Assembly (NCBI GenBank): GCA_963924565.1
Contig: OZ004613.1
Span: 13,330,001 to 13,394,000 of the forward strand
Source of the DNA: Ascidiella aspersa
Lineage: Eukaryota
Length of the DNA stretch: 64,000 nt
Reading direction: 5' to 3'
Made by a program: the position numbers and the translations under genes. Of this stretch, positions 1-16,129 are shown one piece after another. A model generated the notes under the pieces. That model was not told where the DNA came from. It saw only the letters and a program-made list of their open reading frames with translations, and ran no database searches. The stretch's first letter is position 1. Every line of letters starts with the position of its first letter.

Positions 1-134
1 CTACAAAACAACATTGCTAATTTGCGAAAAACAAATTTGGTTTTACTAATTTTTGGAGTTTTAAAAGAAGAATGACAGTTAAAATTTGTCAAGTGTCACC
101 ATTTCATTCGCTGCTATTTATTTCCAAATTTCAG

Positions 135-3100
135 ATGAGCAGCGCTTTCGAGCGCAAGTTTCAAAGCCGGACAGAGGCCGTGAAGAAATTGGCAACTGCA
201 GTTCGGTCGTCGTACAGTGGAACGAGCTCACCTTCTTATAAATGCTGCCTAATACCATCAGGACAACTGGAACATGATACGCGATTTAAACAACCTGTAA
301 GCGTGAGATTACTTAGTGGTCAAAATTTCTCGTTTGGGCTGGTAAAGACTGCTTCATACCTTCATTGTAAAATAATTTATACATCAGTGTTTCAAAACTT
401 TTCTTTCCACAGCCCCTTTTCGTATTGGTTCGTCGCCTTACTCTCTTACCCCAGACATTAAATAAGTATCATATTAAATACTGATACAATGCATTAGTGC
501 TGTGTAATGCGTTGTTTTTGCAACGTAACAACACCATTGGAATTTTTAACTTTATTTTAATCTAATACGTAAAAGTAAGCAAGGACACCGTATGTCAGCA
601 AATTCAATAAAATGAAGTTTTAGAATATCACAGGGGTTGTGCTCCCCTGTAAATAACCATAGAGCACGACAGTAGTTTCATTTCTTTCAGGTTTCGACTT
701 CTCAAGTTTGTGAGTTGATTTCGTCCAACGCACCGAGCTCGTCCACTAGATTGCAAAGTGGTTTCAGCAGGGCTTGTATGGACAATCTTGCCAGCGTCCC
801 TTCCATGAAGTGGCAGTATTTCGGAAGTGAGCAGGGCGTCACAACACAATTTCCCGCCACCAAAGCGACGAAATGCGGAAACTTTGACAATCGCTTCAGG
901 TCTAATGGTGATTTAGGAAATATAATTTTGCTTGATATCTTTTAATGAGGATTGCTACATCAAGCAAATTTTCAGGTCATTTTATTGCTGCAGTCGTAAA
1001 AATGTTCTGTTTTTTCTATTGTAAATTTTTAGAAGTGTTTTTCTCATTTCCGACTGCCGGAACTTGTTTAAATTGTGAACGATAAAATGTTAAAAGTGAT
1101 ACGACCTGTCTTTATAGGGCATTCGTCCGGGTTAAAGCCTTGAAACACACCATGCATCGTTTGGCAAACAAATTTGAAGATGTATTTTCTAACAAAATAT
1201 TTGTTTTCCTGATGCAGACCGTGGTACGTGCAAGCCAATGTTCCAATACCGAAGCAAGTTGTCATCGTTATAGACCGAAGCGGTTCAATGAGTCAAGAAT
1301 ATAAAGGAGTGTCGTACATGAAACTTGCAATAGAAGCTGCGAAAACAGTGATAGACACTTTAAATCCCTATGACAAGGTTTGTTGTAGGATACTGTACAT
1401 ACTTGATTTTTGTGTAAATGAATATCATACTTGTGTTAATGTAAAAATACTGTAAAAATAAACAAAACTATTGTATTTTTAATGAATCCTAACTGTTTTT
1501 GTTTGTTTCTGGGTTCGTTGAATGGATGCCAGTCTAAATGTGTCAAATAAACAAACCTAACGTTATTATGCGTTACTTTGAATTCCGATGTATACATTTA
1601 AGCCAGATAGCTGAATTTAATGCTTTAATGAAAACAATTTTTTTAAGTTTGCTTTTATCGCTTTTTCGTCGAGTGCTGAACTCTTCACGGCCAGTGAGAT
1701 CCCAAACGGCACCTGTTACAGAACAAGCTTCGCCCAGGCAACGCCAAAGAACAAAAAGCTCGTTAAAGAGCACATCGACGATATTTATCCAAGCGGTAAA
1801 CTTCAATGTTGTCCGCAAATCATTGGAATTTATTTAACTCTAATTTTTTGTTGTATAAATATGTCTATCGTAACGTTTTATTAAACCTGCAAATTATGTA
1901 ATGCTGGAAATAGTGTCTCGTAAACAATATTTACGTTTGATAGACTTTGTCATGCAAATTTAAAACTTTCCTGTATATATTTCAGGTGGAACAAGATTTG
2001 TGGCAGCATTGCAAGCAGCATTCACATTTTTTGATCTGGTCAAAGACGACACTGAAGGTTGGACAATTTAATGGATAATTTACACTATGGTTTTGGCTGT
2101 TGACTACACTGGTGACAATGTATAGAATTCCACAATTTCCTTCCGGGCAAACTGTTAAAAAGAAAGATTGCCTGTAATGGAGGAGTTTCTTCAAATTATC
2201 AATAATTTTTCAAATTGTCCAAAAAAGGATAACAATAATTTTAAGTAATATTGTGCCTCATAACTCTTTGATAAATACTTTAGCAAAACTTTTAAATTTG
2301 CCTATAGCTTTTTTTACTTTTTTGTTAAATAGTTTGATAAAAATCTGGGCTGTGTACAACATGATTTGTCATGGGACAGAAACAATGCTTTAATATATAC
2401 GTTTTTAGATGAATACGATAAGAAAATAACCTGAATTTGTCAAGGAACAAAACAGTTAATTAAAATACAGTTAAACGTCTCTCACCAATTTTTTTACGTT
2501 TATATAAACAAGTTCGTGTTGAAATAAGTGTAAATTAACAACAAAAGTTTTAATATGGTTATCCCTTTCATTCGGGTGACTGATATTCAAAACGTATTTC
2601 GTGGTTATAAGTGCAACAAAGCAAGGGCTTATTGTGCAATGCGTCAAAAAATTCAAATTAACTACTTCCGGATTTTTTTTATTGAAAAAACTTGTGAAAC
2701 CTAAAATAGATGGTTTATAGAGCGTACTATTTTTTGATACATCAATTGCTTTTTGTTGTGCCTAATGCGTAGCCTATTATTAAGTTTTTTAGGGATTAGC
2801 CTATTCTATAATTCAGGGTTCATTAATTTTTCCATAAGTTTCCACCAAATGAAACACCATCCGGAAGTTAACAGAATATGTGCGTTTATAAATTGAAACT
2901 AACTGCAAATCCTAATAAACCCAAACTTTTTTATTAGGCCCTAACACTTAATTAGCAACACAAACAATTAACAAAAAGGACAAAAAATCAACTGCCGGCA
3001 ATTAACTAAAAATAAAAAAAAATTAATGATTTATATGTAACTGTTTATAGCAGTGGTTTGGGGATTTCGGGGTTGCGTTTGGGTTTGGACAATTTCATCA

Positions 3101-6100
3101 TCATTTAAAGAAGATATGGTGTGCATACGTTAAGTGGTGCAGGATAATTGAAAACAACTGTATTACTAAGTCTGGTAATGAAAGTACCGTGTTAAAAAAT
3201 GTTTAAAAAAACGTTCAGTAAAATGATTTGTTTACAAAAGCAATAAATACTGAATTACATAGAATAAGAAAAATTTGAGACAGAAACTTCCCTAATTTCG
3301 TAAAATATTTTCGCAATGGACCAGCTTAGGTAACGTGTCATCTAGGATAACCTTCCTCTCAAACTATTCACGATTTTGCTTAATAGCGCAATTTGTTACA
3401 GCAGATAAGGTTATGCTGTTTATGTCGGACGGGAAACCAAGCGATTCAACAAGCAACATTTACCAAACCATAACCTATAGGAACCGGAACCTTAACAATT
3501 CAGTGATTATAATGACGTATGGTCTTGGATCTGGCGTAGGTTCGTGTTTATTTTTGTTTTCAAACGTGTGGCATAACATCCCATGTGTTAAATTTTTTAC
3601 AACCCTCTAAATAAACTTTTGTTATTTATTTCTTTTATAAGTTAAACGTTTTGAATTTTCTTAATTAAAAGTAAACAAAAGTACGGTATTTTATTTCATC
3701 TGTCTTAAATATAGTTAAATTTTTTTCAGACTCAACAGTTTTGCAGAATATGGCAAAATCCACGGAGATAGAGGTTGGATCCGATAACAAGGTTTGACTA
3801 TTCCATTGTTTTGATGATAATCTGTTGAAAGTTTTTAGCATAATGGATATTTTGTTTCATCTTTGATGTCTGTTATAGCTTGAATTGATGGTGGTAAAAA
3901 AAATTCAATAAAGAAATGCAGGTGACTCCAGCGTAACACGTTAGGTTGCACTATTACTCATTTCGACCACAAGTAAAAATAGAATATATTGTTATTTATA
4001 AAAGACCATGGTAGGCTAAATTTACTCAAAATAGGATCTGAAACTCTATTAAAAAAAATGAAGGTTTGTTGCATTATTTTCCTAATTTTATATATGTATA
4101 GAAAAATTTCATTTATTAAATTTTTTCGATTAGGGTGAATTTAAAACTTTCGTTTCAGTTCCGGTTCGACTAAATTTATTTTCAAAACCGATTAAAAAGT
4201 TACGGTTCGGAAACAATAAGAGTTGCGTTAAACCTAAAAAATCGTTTAATAAATGTAGAGAATGATTGTATTGAACTGTAACCCGTATTTCATCTAAGTT
4301 TCGTGACGTATTAAATGCCAAACCGCTCATTATTGAAATATCTCAAAAAAACGTTTTGCTTACTGAAATGAACATATTTTCATTCATTTTTTGCACTGTT
4401 GTAACGTATGTCACTTTTTTGTGAGTTATCTGAGATATAAAGTTTATCTCGAAACACTTTTATGATTTTACATTTATTCAAAAATAATTTACAAGTCTGA
4501 TAAAATAGAGTTAACGAATAAAAGTTATCCTATGCTTTTCATTGTACTAATCGCCAAACAACTTTTTATTTAAATACTAATCAAAGAAGGAAAATTCGGA
4601 CATTGCATTAAACACAAGTTGTAAGGTCATGCTGGAGTTAACCGCTTTTTAACAAGTTAAAGTTCGGGTTTCTCTAAAACATTGGGTTATTGTTTTGATT
4701 TCATTAAATAAAGATGATTTTAATAACTATTTCCGTGCTATTTGCAGCAAAGCCAATATACAGCAATTTCAACACCTTCGAATTTGCGAAATAAAATGGC
4801 GTCATATTACAATTTCTTTTCAATTCAAGGACAGCGAATTACAAAACCAGTGTGGACAGTACCTTATCTTGATGGCTGGGGTTTAGGTAATGGAATAATG
4901 TATTGAAATGTCATATTATTTTTTTGATTATTATTATTTATCAACCAATATTAGGAAATGTTTTTATTAAATATTTGCATTTTTGTAGGCCTGTACTTCA
5001 TTGTACAGGATAAATCCAGGCAATTTACTTTGTCTATTAGTCTATTCTATTATTGTTTTACCAGGGTTGATGATCACGGCAGCTTTGCCAGTTTATACAA
5101 GCAATCTAATAGGAGTTGCCGCAGTGGACATAACTATCGAAGAGCTGTTGGCCGAATCAAGTTTCTTTAAACCAACTGAACTCTTTTACTCATTTGTTAT
5201 TAATAAGAAAGGTAATGTATGCTTATAGTAAGGAAAGATGTTCCTGAGACCTAAGTTTTCGAATTGTTAACTGTTTAGGATTTTACAGTAAATTTGCAGG
5301 CCCACCGTACGTAGCTTAACAGATTTCATTTTATATCGTCCATAACTCGTTATCGACATTCATGGGTTTCTAAGTTTATCTTAGTGGCATGAGAAGTGCC
5401 ATATAACTAACATTGCGTTTTTAACTTATTAGTAAATTCCAAATTCTGAAACACATGTTCCGTTATAGGTTTCAATTTATATTAGTGGAATCCAAAACTA
5501 GTGGAATCTAAAAAAGCAGCGGGTGGCTGTCAGTCAATCACTGCTTAGCTAACATTTATGTAAACATGTAAAAATTAAGTGAAACTGTATAATATTAAAA
5601 TATATATTTTAGTAATCACCTCGGTATTGACAGTTTTGTTTTACGATACATTTATTAGATAAGTATACTTGAATTTTAGGTCTGGTCATCAACCATCCCT
5701 TATTTCCCACCGTGACCACGGGCGAACCATTGTTTGTCGAAGTAACCGCATTTGAGTCGGACCCGCAATTCCTTTCTGTATTTTCATCAATGAAGAGGTA
5801 AACGAGTATTAGAGTTTGGTTAGGAAGCCAATAAAAGTTACGAATGTTTTAATATTTCGAACCTTGCGCTAACCCAGCGCCACAAAACCTTTAATGTCGA
5901 ATAATTTACCCACAAAAACACGAAATGATTTAACCATTATAAATACTATTGAATTATCTCCACTATTATCTGCAACGCGTGTAACTATGTAGGTTTATCA
6001 GAAATTATAAAATAGGAACCGATACCTCATAGCAACAGTGCAAAACCAAAAATACATTGTTGTTGGCTTTTTACCTATTTTGCGCCCAGTTTGGCCTGGT

Positions 6101-9100
6101 AACGTACAGCTGTCAGAAAACAGAATGTGAAAACAAAGATTTATGAAGTTCCAAAGTTTGCCCAATAAAAGATAAAGTTCGTCCAATGAAAGGATATAAT
6201 AACTGGTAGAAGAAATGAAAGGCATAACGTCTTGCAAACCTGGGCAATTATCGCCTAGCATTTTTCATACAAGTTATGCTACACTGAGAAGTTTCATTTG
6301 GGCCGTAGGCTATATTATACACAATATACTGACGAGTCACCGTTTTGTCAGATCCCATTCATACGTGAACACATTCAAATATATTGAAGGGTCCCTAATT
6401 AACCATATTTATAGCCCGGGATCCAGCAACAAAAGTTAATTTATCGCAGTTCAATGTTTCACGAAGTTAATTTACCGCAGTTCATTGTTTTAAATTGTAC
6501 ACTCATTCTTTAACAAGGGTAGAGAAGCTTTGGCTCTCGAGCCATTTAGGGCTCTTTGAATACCGTCATATGGCTCTTATGATAAAGTAATCTTGCTCGC
6601 AAATAGATCTGAGCTATCATTTATTATCATGGCATGAATAAAACTCCACGCGGCCATGACTCCTTCCAAACTGTATTTTTTTAACAAGTTTAATAACACT
6701 TGAATAAAACTCCACGCGACCATGAACCCTTTCAAACTATGGGTAATAGCAAAATTTTTCTCGGTCTGTTTTTTCGTGGCTGTTAGCCGATTTGATGAAA
6801 CTCAGTAACCGAAGTTTTGCAAACTTAGCCACAGTACTTTTTCGCGTTTACTTTAGAATTAGATGTTGAAATACATAACAAGACTCTCATGGAAATACAA
6901 CCAAAAAATATTCGGCTTTTATGGCTTTTTCAATTGAAAAGATTTCCGACCCCTGTTCTACAACATGTTTAATCCTATTCAGCGGCGGGTCAGGTAACAA
7001 AACCTTCATGTCCACCCGAATACTTCCCCAAGGCGACAGCACAAATTATCCGGTGAGGAAGGTTCGAGTGCAATCCACATACTACTGGAAACAGGTTTGA
7101 AAATCAATAATTTTTGACGGTTGTTGTTTCGCCATATATATATATTGCTGCCATTAAATCGTGAAACGTATAACATTTGTAAATCTTCGGGTTTGTAGTT
7201 TTTCAGTATCGGTTTAATTCTATTTTGGCGTACCGGTACTTGTCTTAAATATTGGGTTTGTTATCGTTGTACAAAATTGTTTACGACTTCCAACGTGGTA
7301 TTTTGGTTTGCCATGCTGTTGAATTATTATATCGATGTTTTTAGATTTCAGGAACTGAATTTTCGCTTTGCCTGGTTTTGGCTGACAACGATCAACAAGT
7401 CTTGCTTCAAAATCTCGGCTCTCTTCCCTCAGATTCCTTTCTATATCATCGACTCGACCTGGTTCAACCTAAGCAACAGTGTTATCATGGAAACAACTTT
7501 TGCTCAAAGGGTTAGAGTGTTCAATGCATGTAATGCGGAAATAAGTCAATTATTCCACGCCTGATTCGGCTTAAACATTTTTTCCCACATGGATTTTGTC
7601 GAAATTAGTAATAACAAAATGCATGCTGTTATATCTAATGTAATGTTTAGGACATAAGTATATTTATCATATCAGGGTTAGGTCGAGCATTTATTGGAGT
7701 AGTCGCTTATTTACATTAGTATAAGATTAACGCACAGCACAATAGATAGTTAGAGACATGTGACTACAGAGCACGTGGCTGAGGGACGGCGGGTAACCTC
7801 TCCCAGTAGAACGGCGTGATTATGCCATGACTGAAACGAAATATACAGTACGTTCCTGCAATATGGTGCCAAAAGCCAAAATGTTAATAGCTTTTCGGAT
7901 CTGCCAAAATTTCTCACTGTTCGCTATGTTATATCCAACATGTATGTCTGCTCCTTAAAACGTCACAATGTGCATTTTATAACGTTTAGGACCTAAGAAA
8001 ATTTATCGGGCCACAATTAGCTTTGAAACAAAATAAACAATCTGTTGTTGAGTTTTTCTTCAACTTTTATCATTTTGCTGCAGACCAAAGCTCAGTTGCT
8101 CTGGCAGCGAGGGCCTTCAAAGACCCTGAGCAATATATTTCTGTTCCTGAGACGGTAAATGACGTTACAAAAATGGAAAACTACATGGAGGGAAAGACGA
8201 GTAGTACCGTTTTAAAGGTATGCGGTTGTCGGTTCGTTTAACTTAGGTACATCGTTATGAAAAGCGTTTAATGCCTATTCCAAATCTATAGCAGCTGTGA
8301 CCTTTCTCCAATTACTGTCTGGCTTGCACTCTCAAAGCCTTTTAAAAGGAATAATTTTAAGAATACTTTTTACTCTTACCAAAAAATCAATTTTTTTTCA
8401 TTAAAACAAAATAGTCTATTTAGTTTTTATCAATTGTAAAACTAAAATATGTTATTCAATTGGAAAATAATCACTGCATCACTGCATCACTGCATGGAAT
8501 ATAACCTACCCGTTTGGTTTTGTAGATTTATATAAGTGAATTATGAAATCACTAATTTTACATGTCAGGCTGGCGTGAAAAATGAGGTGGTGGCCACTTA
8601 CAAAGCAGAGGAACTTTGGAAGAAGATTGATGAGGACGACTTGAGTAAAAACGTCTTCTGGAGATACGTAGCCACAAAGGAAGGCATGATCCGCATCTTT
8701 CCGGGGACTCAGTTGCCCAGCAATTTTGATCCAACCACGCGATCCTGGTGAGTTAATTCATAGGCTTGATTCTCATCAATAATAATCTAAAGGATTTTAG
8801 GAAGCAAGGTGTCAGTGTGGCAAACTGATGTGTAAAAAATGAAGATATATTTGCCGCCCGTACACGTAAATGACGACAATGACTTCATAAGGGAGCAAAT
8901 ATTTTCAGACTGTCCTGCCATGGTCTTCGTTCTAATTAAGAGACGGCGATGATGCCTTATTTTAAGGCGAAATACATATTTCTCTTTTAAATGACTAGAT
9001 TTTATTAATGACTGACTTTGACCAAGACAGGAAAGTCTAAATAATATTGGAAAGGTTCACTGTGTTTCAACTTTTGTTTGTCAAAGTAGCCACTTATCAA

Positions 9101-12100
9101 TTTGCTGTGAACGTTGAGATATAACCCAGCCTATATTATCAAACATATCCTGCTTTATGCCCCCCCGAGTGTTTATCGTTTTAGTCAATAAAAATTATTT
9201 CTTTAAATCCAGGTACGAATACACGCTAGCAAACCGTGACAAGTACGTTGTAACTCCACCGTACCGTGACGCGGCCAGTACACTCAGTGTGATCTCTCTT
9301 TGTCGAGCTCTGTTTGAGGGAAGGTAAGCGAAATGCACCGCGACCCTCACGATAAGCCAAACAATATAATAATGTGTCCCAGTAGCCACAGCTGCTAGTT
9401 GATGCAATAAAACGCATTTATAATTCGCGCCTACTCTTGACAGTTTTACTTTTTTCCTGTTTTGCTATCCTATTTAAAAACAAAAACATTTTTCAGTAGT
9501 TTCTTGATAATATAATCTATCCAAATTGTACAACATTTTTGGCTGTATTGTTTATTCATGTTGCTGTTTAATAACACATTTACTAAAACTAAAAAACAGA
9601 CAAGGTGGTGTCCATGATCCAATCAAGGATAAGCTGATTGGAGCAATGGGAGTTGACATTGTGACGCCATACTTCATCCAGATTCTCTCACAGCTCTATC
9701 CATTCTGCAACGAAACAAGTCGATACTCGTGAGTGCGATCACTAAAACTTTAACCTTAACTTTTTTATTATTAAACATATTATTTCAAACATTCTTCGTT
9801 CGGCAGGTGTTTGGTGATTGATCACTCCGGATTCGTGATTGCTTCGCCTTCTTTCCTGAAAGCTCCTGAAACAGCATTTAACAGACATATCGCTGCAGAG
9901 GACAAAAACCTGGCCGCCGCCTTATTCGCCGCTAACATTCTGAAGCCGGCTCAATGCTCTAATATTGAAAACGGCCTGATTCAAAAAACCTTTACGGTAA
10001 AACGCTCGTATATTAATCAGGGATCTGCTAAGTATTTTATGTAACACACGGTGACATGGATAATGTGTTTCGACCACAGATCACAGTAAAACGATAGGTT
10101 GATATTCATTTCGAACTAAAAATAATTGAATGAAATTTACATATTTTGTATCTTACAGTTTGTTCGTTTACAATGTAGACTTTTTATCATATCTTGGTAT
10201 TTTTAAAACTTGCCGCTTGTTTAAGATTTCTGCCAACCAAAGCACGTACATCGGTCGGACCTTCTACCCCGACTGCTATTATTTCGAGTTGAAGCCGGTA
10301 GAGGGCACCAACGCGCTTATGCTCATGGTCGACAAATCTTCAAAGCGATGTTCGAACTTTGTCATATCAAGTTGTAGATGCACTCAATCATACAACGCGG
10401 ATGTAAGTAACTTCTTTAAAATATATGTTTGCAAAGCTGCGTTAGCTTTTTAAAAAATTTTTTTTTTAATTACATGGAGTTCATTTAGATAGTAGTTCAA
10501 TTTTTTTGTTCCAGACGCCAACCTGCTCATCGTCTGCTTACACTAACTGCTCATGTCCATGCACCACCTATAATGGAGCATTTCACCCGTGCGAAAACCA
10601 ATACCTAATTGACGGGTAAGAAATACACGCTTTGTCACATTTGAAGTTGTTGTTTCTTCCAACTAAGACAGCCACTGTTTTATAACCATTCATGTTACTT
10701 CCAGGTTTCCGGATTATCCACGAGGCCAAAACTAATTAGGTTTGCATAGGCAACCCTGATAAATAGTTTCTAGTATAACACCCTTGTGGTAGTAAAACAG
10801 TTATTGTTTCACATATAAAATATTTATCAAGATCGCGGTTCCACTGTACTGATTTTTAATTATAATTTTTTACTAAACATAAAGGCGGGGATTTTTACTT
10901 CTTCTAAAAAGGAAAGCTTTGTTGCTTCATTTTAAATTCTGTTAATATCTGGATGAAAGTCGATATAAAATCAATTTCATTTATTCATACAAAACACGAA
11001 GGTATTTTTTTCTGCCTGTTTGGGGATAAATAATTGGCCTCAATGTATGACGCTTTTTTATTCAACCTGAAGTTGACATATTTGTGTCACGAAGGATCTA
11101 AACAAAATAATAAAATATAGAATGACCATGTGACAAATGCACACTAGGAATTTAGTATGCCGCTATAACGCACAATTTGGGGCAATGTAACTATATTCAA
11201 TATTAAATTCAAAATATCCTACTATTCTAAAGTAGTAGGTATCTGCTATATTTTCTTTCGACTTTTGACAAAATTGGCGGTTTCGATACATACATGGTTT
11301 TACAGCGATTTCTGTTTTAACCGTACAACCTGCTCCCCTTTTTCAGTTCGACACCCCCGCCGTGCACCCCGGATCAGGTCGATCTTACAAAAGTCGGTAC
11401 ACCTCCAGTTGACTTAACCACTCTTGGCAAGTGTTACAACATTGCTTTTACCGTACCCCGAAACAGCACCGCCAATGCCGGCGGCCAATCCACGAATATC
11501 ACAATTATTGTGGTGTGCGTCGTGGTGGGTTTGATTTTGCTTGCAATCATCTTCATGTGCTGCAGGTAGTGGAAGAGCGGTGCTTCCGTTGGACGTTCGG
11601 TAAGAACATAAAACTATTACTATTTACTTCAGTGACAGTTTACACTTGAAATAGTAAAAAATACACTTGTACAAATAATCCTTGAGCTGAGTAATCGTGA
11701 CAAATTTTACATGAACAAAATTTTTCGTTTCCCAACCTTTTTTACACTAGTGCCCCCTTGGGCTCAATATTATTTCATATCGCCCCCCTCATCTTGCTTT
11801 ACAGTAAAGTATTATATTAATCGTTGTCTAACATCATATTGTCTTCACTTTCGATTCGATAAGCTGTCAGTGATATTTTAGGTTGCCTAACATACATTCA
11901 CTATTGGAATTTATACATACATTATTTCACCAGGTTATGTCATTACCAGGAAAAATTCATATCTTTCTGCACCAAGACTTCAAATCCTTTTCTAGTCGCG
12001 GGCCGCAACCAAACTCATAAATGTCTCTGTGGGCCGCGCAAAATGTTAACTTAGAAAAATGTTAGAACAACTGTGAATCAGGCGGGCCTCGGATTTTTTT

Positions 12101-13769
12101 TATCCATACTAATAATGAAAAGTGTAATAGTGTTTGTTAATGTTTTGAAGTCCGGGCGCACCTGGCGATCGAAGCGAGCGCGATTTTTTGGGGTATAACG
12201 GCATTTCTTTTAAATTTCCTGCTAGTTTTTATTTACCGTTAAAAAATATATGTCTAATATTTTTGAATACGTTTTCCGTTTGTCCGCGACACACTTGGCA
12301 GCCTTCCACGTCCCAACGGTAAAGAAGCGCTGATCTAGTCCAAAGACAGCATCAAAACGTAAACAAACTGGACGTAGAAAGATCATTCGCGCAGCGCGAA
12401 AATTTTTCGCCCGTACTAAGTTAAAATAGTCAAAAAGTATTTAAAATGGACTCGTGTCTAGTTGTCAAAGAGGCGGCGGGTCGAGGGCCGTAGATTGGCG
12501 ACCCCTACTTTAAATATACAAACATTTTGCCGCGTATAAAACGGTGAAACGCGCCAACAACCAACAGCTTTACATAAGAAAGCCAATTATTACGTAACAA
12601 TGGTCGGAAAACTACTACAAGTTCGCAGTACGGAAGTAGCCATTTAAGGTTAAAAGTTACCTACGTCCTACAGTGCTGTTTGTTACTTTTTTTATGTGAA
12701 CATTTTATCAAATTTTGATATAAGAACTTTCATGTAACACCCCCTTATGTGCGTTCAGCGCCCCCCAAATCATGAAAAGACTCAAAACGCCCCCTTGGAA
12801 CTCGCCAACGCCCACAAGGGGGCGGTACCGCCCACGTTGGGAACCTCTGCATTAAACGATGATATAAGAACGTATTTGTGCATTCAATAAGAATTGTGCA
12901 GATTAACTTTACTTGGCCGGGTAAACAGAAGTAAACATACTTCGCTATGAAAACCGAAATATTTTTTTTAGTTAACGGGAATGGTCAGCAACAGATTTCC
13001 TAATTATTCCTCTGGAAGACACTAAGTATAGAAGACCAATTGTTACTAAAAATGTCATCGAATAATATCGCAAACAACATAAACATTTGTCTTTCCATAA
13101 ACTCATTAAATTAAGTTATGGTCTTTACCACAACCATACCATGTTAACTGCCTTTTTTTATCACATGCTACTTTCGCAGTTATACACAATTTGGGCTGCT
13201 TAGTAAACCACTTGTCGTACCAGTGTTTATATCGTCAACCATTTTTCACAAATAACAGTCGTCGCAGGCATTAACTTGTTATTGTGAACAAAAGTTTTAA
13301 AGTATTTCTTACCTTTTCTATTCTTCAAAATAATCCGTTCGTATAACAATATCCAAAGTGATCATTTTGATGGCCTAATTTCATAACCCGCTATAGTTGC
13401 AACACTTTAAAATACGACGGTATGAGAAGTTTTAATGGCACATGCTATTTTGAAGGAATTCGTCAGAATCAAGCCTGGTTGTCACTTCTTTATTTTTATG
13501 ATCTTAGTGCAGGGGAACAACTTTATTAGTCAAGAATTGTTAAATTTTTTTTCAATATTTGATCTTGAATTAAATTGCCACAGGCTCCAGCAACGATCCA
13601 CACAGCTCCGGCACCAGCGGCCAACACAAACTACGGATACGCGTCTTCGCCGAGTGCACCCCCACAACCTCCCCCAACCAACCCTTATTACACGGCCGAT
13701 AAAGCACCACCTGGGCAATTCCCCCCGAGCTATTCCACGTCAGTTGGCTACAACAACCATCCAATGTAG
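135..13769 (+). CDS. CACHD1: VWA and Cache domain-containing protein (CACHD1/alpha2delta-like), 5' end outside window; multi-exon
   Basis: Frame-consistent GT-AG exons: 135-296, 691-899, 1218-1377, 1648-1795, 1986-2057, 3402-3539, 3730-3791, 4748-4886, 5065-5211, 5680-5797, 6983-7094, 7345-7510, 8084-8217, 8569-8747, 9213-9323, 9600-9728, 9807-9996, 10226-10402, 10515-10615, 11347-11599 (in-frame TAG at 11567-11569), plus putative tail exon 13584-13769. Motifs: KWQYFGSEQG, FDNRFRPWY, VWA VVIVIDRSGSM / GGTRF / FMSDGKP, PYLDGWGLG, IGVAAVD, second Cache WRYVAT..FDPTTRSWY..PYRDA..GVD, CSCPC, TM ITIIVVCVVVGLILLAIIFMCC. Family is secure; strict orthology to CACHD1 is not. Confidence 0.85.
6514..6955. 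mobile_element. hAT-type MITE in CACHD1-like intron
   Basis: Ends CAAGGGTAGAGAA.. / ..TTTCCGACCCCTG; 8-bp flanks TTCTTTAA / TTCTACAA (6/8); internal ~38-bp direct repeat TGAATAAAACTCCACGCG.. at ~6634 and ~6701. Confidence 0.5.
11726..12849. mobile_element. hAT-type MITE with nested MITE fragments in last CACHD1-like intron
   Basis: Left TTTCCCAACCTTTT; right GTTGGGAACCTCTG; GCCCCC subterminal repeats; internal GCGGGCCGC and TTGGCGACCCCT pieces of other MITEs. Confidence 0.5.
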
Positions 13770-16129
13770 ACGATGAACGCCGCAAAACGAGATTTCCTAT
13801 ATTGATTTTTTCGACACGGATACTCACATTTTAAATCAAATGTACCGCGATCCGCTGAAAATGACGTCAATAGTATCGTCCAGATAAACAAAATATAGGA
13901 CGTTAAAGCGTTTAAAGGTATTTTTTTAGACATTTTTTTTAGTCAAAATATTCTTTCGCGTTCTAGGTTTTGTTGCCTTCAGTTGTTGACCTTTTTTAAT
14001 GAATTCACCTTCAAAGGTGGAAAATTTTTGCGTATTGTTATTAAAAAAACAGATCCTCTGGTAATTGTAATTCATTTCTGCGTAGGATCGCAAATCAGAG
14101 ATAAAATACCCATTTTATTTTGGTACGGGATCAGTACCGATACTGCCCGATTATTGGACGAGAAACAGATATACAATTTGGCATCGGGTGTCGGCTCTGA
14201 TCCGATAATAGCTATACAATCAAAAAGGAATTGTCTGTTTGTAGAAAGCATTTGTTACGCTTCTTGAATGCACTTTTAAAACTTTTTTCTTGTTTAACAC
14301 TATTTTTTATATTTTGTTTTCATGAATTGTTTAGCGCCATGCTTAGTTGTTTTACGAACTAAACAAACGAAACCAATGCTTGATTATTATAGCTATTCCA
14401 AATATGTATCTCAAGAAGCTGTATTTAGGTTAACAAATGTATATCTTATACTAACCTTGTTGTTTCTGAATGATGTAGGAATCCTAAATCACATCAGTTT
14501 TGGCAGTTGGGCGTAAATTTGTAACAGACAAATTCGACCAAAATGCCTTAAAAACATTTATATGGTTTCAGATGTTGTGTTCCAATGAGTGTTTTACCTT
14601 CGTCTTTCTAACAAAATAAAACATTGAACAAATCTAAACACAAATGTACATTAAGGCAAACGGATCAATGGATTAAAACCAAAATTCTTCCTCCAAATGA
14701 TTTGCAGAGTTCCATCATTTGCAGTTATCAAGTTATTTTTTTTAATTATCGTTCGAACATGTTAAAATAAGCGATATTTTGTTTTAGCCTTTTTACAAAT
14801 AGACAAAAAGGCTTTACGAATTTGATGTTAACTCTGTGAACGTTTAAAATCTAAACCATAAGTGACTAATATTCAGGGCGATTTGATAAATAAATTATAG
14901 GAAATAGATTTTCAAAAAATTAATTACAGGTCATGACCTTCTTACGTGTTTTGGCATAACGTCAAACAATTTTGGCATGTGAATTATTATAAAACTTTAA
15001 ATGTTTGAATTGGGTTAGAATATTTGTTCTCTATAAAGCATCCAGGTGTAATTTTGAAACATTTTTTTGAGATTAAAAATGTCACAACTTTGCAAAAATA
15101 GTGCTACGTGAAATCGTGATTTTTAAATATGCAACACCAGTACCAAAAAATATTTTTGAGATAAGTTTGCCCAAAATAAAAGATTTTTGAGATAGTTTTC
15201 CCCAAAATGCTGATATGGTAGTGCTGTTATTAGCTAAATGAGATTAAGTAATTTCATGTTCTCTTTATTTGTTGGTTTCTGGAGTGCTGTTAACGCTTTG
15301 CACGTACAATGCGATTCTTCTGGTATCACAAAAAAATTTCAGACAAAGCACAACACAAAGGGGCCTATTCATGTCAGGTTATACTGAAGTGCGTGACTCG
15401 TTGACAGCGCCCAAATGGCAGCGAAACACATTTCAGGTTTAGCGACATTTCCGGCGCTCTATAGGTTTTAATAAGGCCTCACCCTCCTCAATCATCCGTC
15501 GCGACAAAACGAGGTGCGAAAAGGTTCGCCCTTCGTGGCATTCGCGGCTGCTTTCAATTTGCTTCGCGCTAACAACATTGCGGACAGCATTGCGCGCATT
15601 ACCGACGCGTCATTTGCGCGCGAAACAATTCGATTATTCTTGGCCACGCCGGTTCAATCGATAAAGAATAGCGCGATTTTGTCGCTCAGAGTAGGAAAAA
15701 AGCTTGTATCAGTAAAGAAAAAGATGCGGGGTGCGCGACCTGAAGCCTGCTGCCACCAATATATCCCAAGAGTATAACTCCGGCCAAAAAGTGAACCAGC
15801 CTTTACAAACCCAATTATGTAACTAAAATAAGATGTATATTCAGAAATTCACTCATAGGGGTGACAAACATATAAATACATTATTGGAAAATTTTTCACA
15901 ATATGGTATTCCACCTTTAAAAGTTACAGTTTTTGGTATGTTCGAAATTTATTACTGCACTTGTGCACGTTGGATTGAACTCGGGTATCACCATCAATCT
16001 ATCCGTTTCGCGTGCTGTTTGTTATTGTGACGCCAAACGGATGGATTGATTGTGATACTGTACATTCCAAATTTAACAGAGTTTTACGTGAATTTGGTTT
16101 GACAGTGGCGGTAACAAAATATCAGACCC

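What the first reader, a model, noticed from the sequence alone, without database searches (positions are those of the whole stretch)
11347..13769. In-frame TAG right after the TM helix hides a spliceable cytoplasmic tail with NPxY and PPxY motifs
Seen: the TM exon reads ..LLAIIFMCCR-TAG(11567-11569)-WKSGASVGRS and runs on to a strong phase-0 donor (TCG|GTAAGA, 11600). Splicing to the acceptor at 13583 gives, in frame, APATIHTAPAPAANTNYGYASSPSAPPQPPPTNPYYTADKAPPGQFPPSYSTSVGYNNHPM*. Established: NPxY is an endocytosis/PTB motif and PPxY binds NEDD4-family WW domains. Inference: this is either stop-codon readthrough switching between tail-less (alpha2delta-like) and tailed (CACHD1-like) forms, a nonsense allele, or a base-call error. 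The weaker donor AG|GTAGTG overlapping the stop would read the last exon in a second frame that is also open (RLQQRST..QCRR*). The TAG-T context is not a classic leaky one.
Basis: partly seen in the sequence, partly recalled or inferred. Interest (0 to 1): 0.75.

Follow-up and report, generated by a model that had tools for sequence, protein, structure and literature searches.

The report
Nonsense codon in duplicated CACHD1-like gene
One of two near-identical neighbouring copies of a sea-squirt cell-surface gene has a single letter that turns a lysine codon into a stop just behind the membrane anchor, while the twin copy and every other animal sampled read lysine, so this is an ordinary broken (or mis-called) copy and not a regulated stop.

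Summary
An RNA-like contig set (X3) uses the 11599->13584 junction.

The stop is not conserved.
- The window's gene is the second unit of a ~29-kb tandem duplication. The first unit, 29.5 kb upstream, reads AAG (Lys) at this codon.
- A third, divergent haplotype, seen in two contig sets and in one raw RNA read, also reads A at 11567.
- No run shows the T, but no contig that was laid represents copy B at this spot.

The gene is an ascidian CACHD1-like type I membrane protein.
- All 21 relatives in which a crude rule found a C-terminal TM helix have cytoplasmic tails.
- The Clavelina relative shares PSAP, NPxY and FPPSY..SVG with this tail.

What remains is a private nonsense change, or a consensus error, in a redundant young duplicate. 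That copy also carries an in-frame three-exon duplication.

The scan had already noted the neighbouring CACHD1-like pair (s1-790952). Interest is low.

The parts
1..14496 (+). The part of tandem-duplication unit 2 (copy B of the CACHD1-like gene) that lies in the window. Its twin is at G000:C7:13300582-13314989.
   Evidence: window 1-10662 is 99.21% identical over 10,666 columns, and 10726-14496 is 96.29% over 3,800 columns, to the stretch about 29.4-29.5 kb upstream. Searches give the unit boundaries.
10515..10614 (+). Exon before the TM exon
   Evidence: X3 contigs join 10402->10515 and 10614->11346 (cut +1), both with GT..AG ends; tblastn match to P0002 residues 708-736.
11347..11599 (+). 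TM exon: juxtamembrane Cys-containing stretch, TM helix and the first 12 cytoplasmic codons (frame 11348)
   Evidence: X3 record 16 covers 11346-11598; aligns to the Phallusia P0002 C-terminus (E 9e-13), including ..CRK against ..CKK.
11567..11569 (+). TAG in copy B. It is AAG (Lys) in copy A and in the X2/X3/X4 haplotype.
   Evidence: copy A reads ..FMCCRKWKSGASVGRS|gtaaga. place 11567 T>A: X4 1 of 1 read, X1 130.7 of 130.7, X2 91.7 of 91.7, X3 1181.1 of 1181.1.
11563..11571 (+). Cryptic donor CAG|GTAGTG, created by the same T. It is absent where the base is A.
   Evidence: No read or contig shows its use.
11600..13583 (+). Last intron (GTAAGA...CACAG)
11727..12849 (.). High-copy repeat inserted in the intron. 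It is missing from the X2 haplotype.
   Evidence: word depth is 29,000-315,000 here against about 90-130 beside it. X2 record 9 goes from 11726 to 12850 with 8 other letters between. X4 reads lie on both strands here.
13584..13769 (+). Last coding exon: 61 tail codons plus TAG stop, with PSAP (tail residues 23-26), NPYY (33-36) and PPSY (47-50)
   Evidence: X3 record 18. FPPSYSTSVG against FPPSYEESVG at the C-terminus of Clavelina P0007 (8 of 10 identical, E 0.012); the copy A exon is intact and differs by Thr/Ala at tail residue 52.
13770..14343 (+). 3' UTR, at least this far; its end was not determined
   Evidence: X3 record 18 runs to 13898, and X4 reads (first mate on -) lie in 13801-14343; the first + strand AATAAA after 11109 is at 14615.
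135..1377 (+). Second set of three exons (135-296, 691-899, 1218-1377; 531 nt, a multiple of 3). Copy B holds them twice because of an internal 4.1-kb tandem duplication.
   Evidence: 13323238-13327333 against 13327355-13331450, 99.88% over 4,096. P0007 residues 67-244 match twice in copy B and once in copy A; splice sites read.

Best explanation
The locus encodes an ascidian CACHD1-like type I membrane protein.

Normal form (shown): the TM exon ends at 11599 and is spliced to 13584. This gives a cytoplasmic tail of about 73 residues, 12 from the TM exon and 61 from the last exon. The tail starts with basic stop-transfer residues (R-K-W-K) and carries PSAP, NPxY and PPxY motifs.

The window's copy (shown): the window holds the downstream unit, copy B, of a young ~29-kb tandem duplication. 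In this unit alone an A->T change at 11567 turns the first Lys after the helix into TAG.

Consequences if the T is real (inferred): copy B would make a membrane-anchored protein cut off after ..CCR. Alternatively, through the GT that the same change creates, it could make a frameshifted tail. Either way the sorting motifs are lost. Copy A, 29.5 kb upstream, supplies the intact protein.

Copy B therefore looks like a redundant duplicate under relaxed constraint that is starting to decay. There is no programmed readthrough.
For: Sense codon elsewhere
- Copy A has AAG, and its exon and donor are otherwise identical.
- In one search the base at 11567 is A in the X2 and X3 contigs and in the single X4 RNA read, which represent a third haplotype.

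Splice
- X3 contigs show the junctions 10402->10515, 10614->11346/7 and, by 29 loose letters, 11599->13584.
- There is no + strand AATAAA between 11109 and 14615, so the TM exon does not look like a terminal exon.

Duplication
- Window 1-14496 matches 13300582-13314989 at 96-99%.
- The 3.3 kb between the units is 97.4% identical to 13286549-13289764. This gives a direct head-to-tail junction with no N.
- X1 word depth is 111-137 where the units are alike, 55-58 on two contigs that match only copy B, and 57.5 in the unique flank.

Other marks on copy B
- An internal in-frame repeat of three exons.
- Phe at window 5184-5186, where copy A and 6 of 6 relatives printed have Ser.
- Thr for Ala at tail residue 52, against copy A, X1, X2 and X3.

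Family
- Exon 8536-8748 matches CACHD1 (PDB 8s7c) at E 1.8e-10.
- The nearest proteins are named 'VWFA and cache domain-containing protein 1-like', from Phallusia, Clavelina and Styela.
- A crude rule found a C-terminal TM helix in 21 representatives of 900 aa or more. All 21 have tails of 34-226 residues, and 18 of 21 have at least 2 K/R among the first 6 tail residues.
Against: - No read or contig shows the T. The only X1 contig laid over 11567 carries all 7 copy-A markers of 10000-11756, and Logan contigs drop one branch of a variant. So copy B's base was never observed independently, and a consensus error is not excluded.
- The tool warns that word depth is not copy number. X2 has flat depth (92-96) across the unit and its flank, so the duplication may be absent from that animal, or A and B could be allelic.
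- Apart from the TAG, every copy B exon I compared is open, so 'decaying' rests on few lesions.
- No data bear on whether copy B is transcribed.
- The closest relative's model (Phallusia P0002) ends 4 residues after its TM helix. A short-tailed form in ascidians is therefore not excluded.
Confidence: 0.7

Rival explanations
1. Assembly consensus error: copy B really reads AAG as well, and the T at 11567 is a miscalled base.
For:: no run shows T at 11567 (X4 1 of 1 read, and the one contig each of X1, X2 and X3, all read A); it is a single-base difference from copy A inside an otherwise identical 253-base exon.
Against: None of the laid contigs represents copy B here. X1's contig is the copy-A type at all 7 markers, and X2, X3 and X4 are a third haplotype, so the missing T is uninformative. 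Copy B has other private substitutions nearby that X1's contigs also lack (10072, 10836, 10865, 11239). Its sequence is confirmed exactly by X1 contigs where the units differ strongly (records 3 and 5, 0 other letters).
Confidence: 0.15
2. The two units are the two haplotypes of one locus, wrongly laid in tandem. The TAG would then be a heterozygous null or tail-less allele of a single-copy gene.
For: The units are 99% alike, closer than the X2 haplotype is to either (36 other letters in 448 at 11279-11726). X2's depth is flat across unit and flank (92-96), as expected for a single copy.
Against: The assembly has a seamless junction. The end of unit 1 runs without N into a second copy (97.4%) of the start of unit 1, which haplotype retention does not normally produce. 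In X1 the copy-B-only contigs have the same depth as the unique flank (55-58 against 57.5) and half that of the shared parts.
Confidence: 0.12
3. Programmed stop-codon readthrough, or a regulated choice between tail-less and tailed isoforms, at a genuine TAG.
For: The frame stays open after the TAG and leads into a real, spliced, conserved tail. The Phallusia model P0002 ends 4 residues after its TM helix.
Against: The stop is absent from the twin copy and from every other sample. Open frame downstream is expected because the codon was Lys until recently. TAG is followed by TGG, which matches no leaky context that I recall (recall, not a call). Rfam finds nothing in 11300-14600.
Confidence: 0.02

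Closest known systems
Vertebrate CACHD1 (VWFA and cache domain-containing protein 1; PDB 8s7c/9eq6)
   Same: Exon 8536-8748 aligns to residues 710-773 of 8s7c_A at E 1.8e-10. The overall plan is shared: a type I membrane protein with VWA and dCache domains, one TM helix and an unstructured cytoplasmic tail (passages of PMC7615972).
   Different: The tail here is short, about 73 residues, against 158-204 in the longest-tailed hits. It is rich in Pro/Tyr motifs. The VWA exon has DRSGS (D-x-S-x-S). That vertebrate CACHD1 lacks a complete MIDAS motif is recalled, not tested. Copy B as assembled has the tail cut off.
Clavelina lepadiformis XP_076811760.1 (P0007), Styela clava XP_039253634.2 (P0003) and Phallusia mammillata CAB3227394.1 (P0002), all named 'VWFA and cache domain-containing protein 1-like'
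   Same: Collinear tblastn matches over P0007 residues 67-993. In P0007 VWA_N, VWA_2 and VWA pass Pfam's cut-offs, and dCache_1 matches below its cut-off at 37.2 of 45 bits. Basic residues follow the helix. P0007 has PSAP, NPAY and FPPSYEESVG in its tail, and P0003 has SPSAPP.
   Different: Only 27-39% identity over the TM exon. P0002 ends at ..CKKKC with no tail; whether that is a truncated model could not be checked.
Alpha2delta subunits of voltage-gated calcium channels (CACNA2D1-4)
   Same: The VWA_N/VWA/cache architecture. The RPWYVQ..DRSGS exon resembles RPWYIQ..DVSGS of alpha2delta-1, but only at E 0.8.
   Different: None of the 5 PDB hits (E up to 1) of exon 8536-8748 is an alpha2delta. 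The normal product has a true TM helix and a spliced tail. That alpha2delta proteins are GPI-anchored and tail-less is recalled.
Genes with programmed stop-codon readthrough
   Same: An in-frame stop followed by open, coding-like sequence.
   Different: The stop is not shared by the paralogous copy, by other haplotypes or by relatives.

Membership tests
CACHD1-like (VWFA and cache domain-containing protein 1) | VWA_N, VWA and cache domains in this order | tested here: met
   Single window exons stay below Pfam cut-offs: VWA_2 22.5 of 27 bits and VWA_N 17.2 of 34.7 bits. The exons are collinear with P0007 residues 67-993. In P0007 VWA_N, VWA_2 and VWA pass their cut-offs, and dCache_1 reaches 37.2 of 45 bits.
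CACHD1-like (VWFA and cache domain-containing protein 1) | Closer to CACHD1 than to alpha2delta | tested here: met
   8s7c_A (CACHD1) at E 1.8e-10, with no alpha2delta chain among the 5 hits; the four nearest named proteins are all 'VWFA and cache domain-containing protein 1-like'.
CACHD1-like (VWFA and cache domain-containing protein 1) | Single C-terminal TM helix followed by a cytoplasmic tail | tested here: met
   Met for copy A and for the transcript seen in X3. Not met for copy B as assembled, where TAG follows the helix.
CACHD1-like (VWFA and cache domain-containing protein 1) | Binding of Frizzled/LRP6 or modulation of calcium channels | not testable with these tools
   Known for vertebrate CACHD1 only (abstract and passages of PMC7615972).
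Programmed stop-codon readthrough | The stop codon is conserved in alleles, paralogues or orthologues | tested here: not met
   AAG in copy A. A at 11567 in X2, X3 and 1 of 1 X4 read. K or R at the aligned place in P0002. At least 2 K/R in the first 6 tail residues in 18 of 21 relatives.
Programmed stop-codon readthrough | Leaky context or a stimulating RNA element after the stop | tested here: not met
   TAG TGG AAG matches no leaky context that I recall (recalled consensus). There are 0 Rfam matches in 11300-14600. No fold was computed.
Programmed stop-codon readthrough | Ribosomes or peptides beyond the stop | not testable with these tools
   No ribosome profiling or proteomics data were available.
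Young tandem duplicate losing function | Two collinear units joined head to tail | tested here: met
   units 13286549-13314988 and 13314989-13344496, with no N at the junction.
Young tandem duplicate losing function | Disabling changes private to one unit | tested here: met
   TAG, an in-frame repeat of three exons, and Phe at a Ser that is invariant in the 6 of 6 relatives printed. All are in copy B.
Young tandem duplicate losing function | The T is real in the reads, and copy B's expression is lost or reduced | not tested
   The single read-laying run returned no contig or read of the copy-B type over the exon.

The most novel reading that the evidence does not exclude
Copy B is expressed and makes a membrane-anchored CACHD1-like protein without its tail. 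It would lack the PSAP, NPxY and PPxY sorting signals and could therefore stay on the surface. It would segregate as a copy-number variant beside the intact gene. It would be a second way, next to the unanchored neighbour noted in s1-790952, in which this local gene family makes truncated receptor variants that could act as decoys.
Probability: 0.08. Interest if true: 0.35.

Novelty: already known. Interest (0 to 1): 0.15.

Why it matters
This matters mainly as a correction. The in-frame stop is not a regulatory device, so annotators should model the tailed protein from the upstream twin and flag the window's copy as carrying a premature stop.

Two smaller points may be useful.
- The tails of invertebrate CACHD1-like proteins repeatedly carry P(S/T)AP (8 of 21) and PPxY (6 of 21) motifs. 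The two full-text searches I ran for this (CACHD1 with PPxY; CACHD1 with ascidian) found no paper linking CACHD1 to such motifs. This hints at ESCRT- or NEDD4-type sorting of the receptor, which is an inference.
- The locus is a clean example of a very young tandem duplication with early lesions in a highly polymorphic sea-squirt genome.

Tried and rejected
- Terminal-exon reading: I first asked whether the TM exon could be a terminal exon whose genuine stop is the TAG. I rejected this. There is no + strand AATAAA between 11109 and 14615. X3 splices 11599->13584. All 21 relatives with a recognised TM helix have tails.
- Cryptic-donor reading: I asked whether the true donor could be CAG|GTAGTG, so that the stop never enters the mRNA. 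I rejected this as the normal state. The GT exists only with the T, and the X3 contig covers 11346-11598 uninterrupted. Use of this donor in copy B remains untested.
- The search for homologous proteins with the intact copy-A TM exon (84 aa) found nothing. The tool only sees proteins of 46-147 aa for this query, so the blank means little.
- PDB search with exon 9775-10041 found nothing. The VWA exon's best PDB hit (8fre, RBL4) aligns only as five short repeated stretches and looks spurious.
- Rfam and the repeat finder on the intron gave nothing useful.
- In one search one of 17 exon ranges (P0007 residues 387-435) was misregistered by my own coordinates. I dropped it from the count of differences. 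The remaining 16 ranges show 10 base differences and 4 amino-acid differences between the copies.
- The TM rule is crude. It found no C-terminal helix in 23 of the 44 representatives of 900 aa or more, and these are left out of the motif counts. The four extra cluster members (P0143-P0146) are also left out, as redundant.
- I did not build or search a joined (spliced) coding sequence or protein.
- Supplementary files of papers were not consulted.
- Organism: it is inferred to be an ascidian from the names of the nearest proteins and from the scan's notes. The runs' names are coded.
Full report
**Observation.**
- After the acceptor AG at 11345-11346, the exon in frame 11348 encodes a juxtamembrane stretch and a hydrophobic helix ending ..LLAIIFMCCR.
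- TAG follows at 11567-11569, then WKSGASVGRS, then the donor TCG|GTAAGA at 11599/11600.
- Behind the acceptor at 13583/13584 the same frame gives 61 codons, with NPYY and PPSY, and a stop at 13767-13769.
- The other two frames of that C-rich exon are also long and open, so openness alone says little.

**What the gene is.**
- Translated exons give only sub-threshold Pfam matches to VWA and VWA_N.
- Exon 8536-8748 matches the solved CACHD1 ectodomain (8s7c_A, residues 710-773) at E 1.8e-10. No alpha2delta chain is among its 5 hits.
- A full HMMER scan with that exon found 142 proteins at E up to 0.001.
- The nearest named ones are 'VWFA and cache domain-containing protein 1-like' of the ascidians Phallusia mammillata, Clavelina lepadiformis and Styela clava, and of the scallop Pecten maximus.
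- The window's exons are collinear with the Clavelina protein over its residues 67-993. In that protein VWA_N, VWA_2 and VWA pass Pfam's cut-offs, and dCache_1 matches below its cut-off at 37.2 of 45 bits.
- Vertebrate CACHD1 is described as a type I transmembrane protein with an unstructured cytoplasmic tail (passages of PMC7615972).

**Transcripts.** One search for runs gave three contig sets of one study (X1-X3, kind not on record) and one raw RNA run of another study (X4). All four were laid on 10000-15400.
- X3 behaves as RNA. Its contigs skip 10402->10515 and 10614->11346 (cut +1) at GT..AG ends.
- One X3 contig covers 11346-11598.
- A 390-nt X3 contig covers 13584-13898 with 29 further letters in front. 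By eye these equal 11571-11599 carrying the five variants of the X2/X3 haplotype. Twenty-nine letters is 2 below the tool's bar of 31 for a bridge, but the match is complete.
- X3 also has a contig inside the preceding intron (10586-11185), so some unspliced material is present.
- X4 gave few reads on the exons (depth at most 2, about 6% of the run read) and no junction.
- No + strand AATAAA lies between 11109 and 14615.

**The stop is private.** At 11567 every run reads A, not T: X4 1 of 1 read, X1 130.7 of 130.7, X2 91.7 of 91.7, X3 1181.1 of 1181.1. This needs care.
- A search of the window's own genome found a second copy of the exon 29,496 bases upstream.
- Alignment shows that this copy differs from the window's exon by one base, the A at 11567. 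Its exon reads ..FMCCRKWKSGASVGRS|gtaaga.
- X1's contig over 10000-11756 carries all seven upstream-copy markers, including the 67-base deletion. So X1 reports the twin copy, not an allele of the window's copy.
- X2, X3 and the X4 read share a third, divergent haplotype: 36 other letters in 448 at 11279-11726.
- The sense codon is therefore documented in the paralogous unit and in one other haplotype. The T has no independent witness, and none of the contigs could have shown it.

**The duplication.**
- Window 1-14496 matches 13300582-13314989 at 99.2% and 96.3%.
- The 3.3 kb between the units is 97.4% identical to 13286549-13289764, which lies inside a minus-strand CACHD1-like paralogue. The units are therefore 13286549-13314988 and 13314989-13344496, joined head to tail without N.
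- Unit 2 lacks about 2 kb that holds exons of the minus-strand gene. It has an extra internal 4.1-kb tandem repeat (99.88%) that doubles three exons of 162+209+160 = 531 nt, which keeps the frame.
- X1 depth is 111-137 on shared stretches, 55-58 on two contigs that match only the window's unit, and 57.5 on the unique flank. This fits two real units, though the tool warns that such depth is not copy number.
- X2 is flat at 92-96, as expected for a single copy.
- I favour a real, possibly polymorphic, duplication over mis-joined haplotypes.

**State of the two copies.**
- In 16 exon ranges that were compared properly (one of 17 dropped for my misregistration), the copies differ at 10 bases and 4 residues.
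- One of these is Phe in the window's copy where the twin and all 6 relatives printed have Ser.
- In the last two exons the window's copy alone has the stop, and Thr for Ala at tail residue 52.
- The same T creates the GT of the 'weaker donor'. The twin reads CAGGAAGTG there.

**The tail is a family feature.**
- Of 44 representatives of 900 aa or more, a crude rule found a C-terminal helix in 21.
- All 21 have tails of 34-226 residues.
- 18 of 21 have at least two K/R in the first six tail residues.
- 8 of 21 have P(S/T)AP, 6 of 21 PPxY and 3 of 21 NPxY.
- Its FPPSYSTSVG matches FPPSYEESVG at the Clavelina C-terminus (8 of 10 identical, E 0.012).
- The Phallusia model ends 4 residues after its helix.

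**Mechanism.**
- Shown: the normal product is a tailed type I membrane protein, and the window's copy has a Lys-to-stop change absent everywhere else sampled.
- Inferred: if the T is real, copy B yields an anchored, tail-less protein. The stop lies about 30 nt before the last junction. By the mammalian rule, recalled from memory, that would spare the mRNA from nonsense-mediated decay.
- Inferred: alternatively, copy B yields a frameshifted tail through the new GT.
- Inferred: copy A covers the function, so the lesion is tolerated.
- Readthrough is not needed and is not supported.

**Comparison and novelty.**
- This is a member of a known family, with orthologues already predicted in three ascidians. 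The lesion is of a familiar kind, in a young duplicate.
- The scan had already noted the neighbouring head-to-head CACHD1-like pair 'repeated as a cassette' (s1-790952). I had reached the duplication independently, and I confirmed the minus-strand paralogue.
- Searches for CACHD1 with PPxY (0 papers) and with ascidian (1 paper, seen only in the search listing) found nothing on these tails.
- Interest is low. The most novel reading left is an expressed tail-less decoy copy.

Noticed in passing
G000:C7:13323238-13331450 (window up to 1450): Copy B has an internal 4.1-kb tandem repeat (99.88%). It doubles three exons (531 nt, in frame) that encode the end of VWA_N and the start of the VWA domain, including DRSGS. 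Copy A has them once.
   Followed up: partly
window 11727-12849: A high-copy repeat (word depth 29,000-315,000) sits in the last intron of copies A and B but is missing from the X2 haplotype. X4 RNA reads lie on it on both strands, probably from other copies.
   Followed up: partly
window 13071-13458 and 13797-13873: In these stretches of the last intron and the 3' UTR the two duplication units differ far more than elsewhere: dozens of substitutions and indels, against under 1% in the rest. This may mark a gene-conversion boundary or a different haplotype origin.
   Followed up: no
window 11567-11599: The 11 codons between the helix and the donor are very polymorphic. Six of 33 bases differ between the window and the X2/X3 haplotype, and besides the stop three of them change the residue (Trp, Gly and Ala each to Ser).
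   Followed up: partly
window 5184-5186: Copy B has Phe where copy A and all 6 relatives printed have Ser (the ..ELSYSFVI.. motif).
   Followed up: partly
window 13650-13661 (tail residues 23-26) and the tails of P0003, P0006, P0007, P0055, P0063, P0123, P0125, P0130: A P(S/T)AP motif, often as PSAPP, recurs in the cytoplasmic tails of CACHD1-like proteins (8 of 21 tails), often together with PPxY.
   Followed up: partly
P0002 (Phallusia mammillata CAB3227394.1): The closest relative's protein model ends ..VCKKKC, 4 residues after its TM helix, with no tail. Whether it is a truncated model or a real short form could not be checked.
   Followed up: no
L012, G000:C7:13280476-13280577 (minus strand): The juxtamembrane exon of the neighbouring minus-strand CACHD1-like paralogue matches residues 2-35 of the TM exon (50% identity) and has an in-frame TAG.
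   Followed up: no
window 13899-14162: Contigs of X1, X2 and X3 stop at 13898-13903 and resume at 14048. The X3 contig runs on for 46 letters unlike the window. 13982-14162 has high word depth. This is probably another repeat or indel in the 3' UTR.
   Followed up: no
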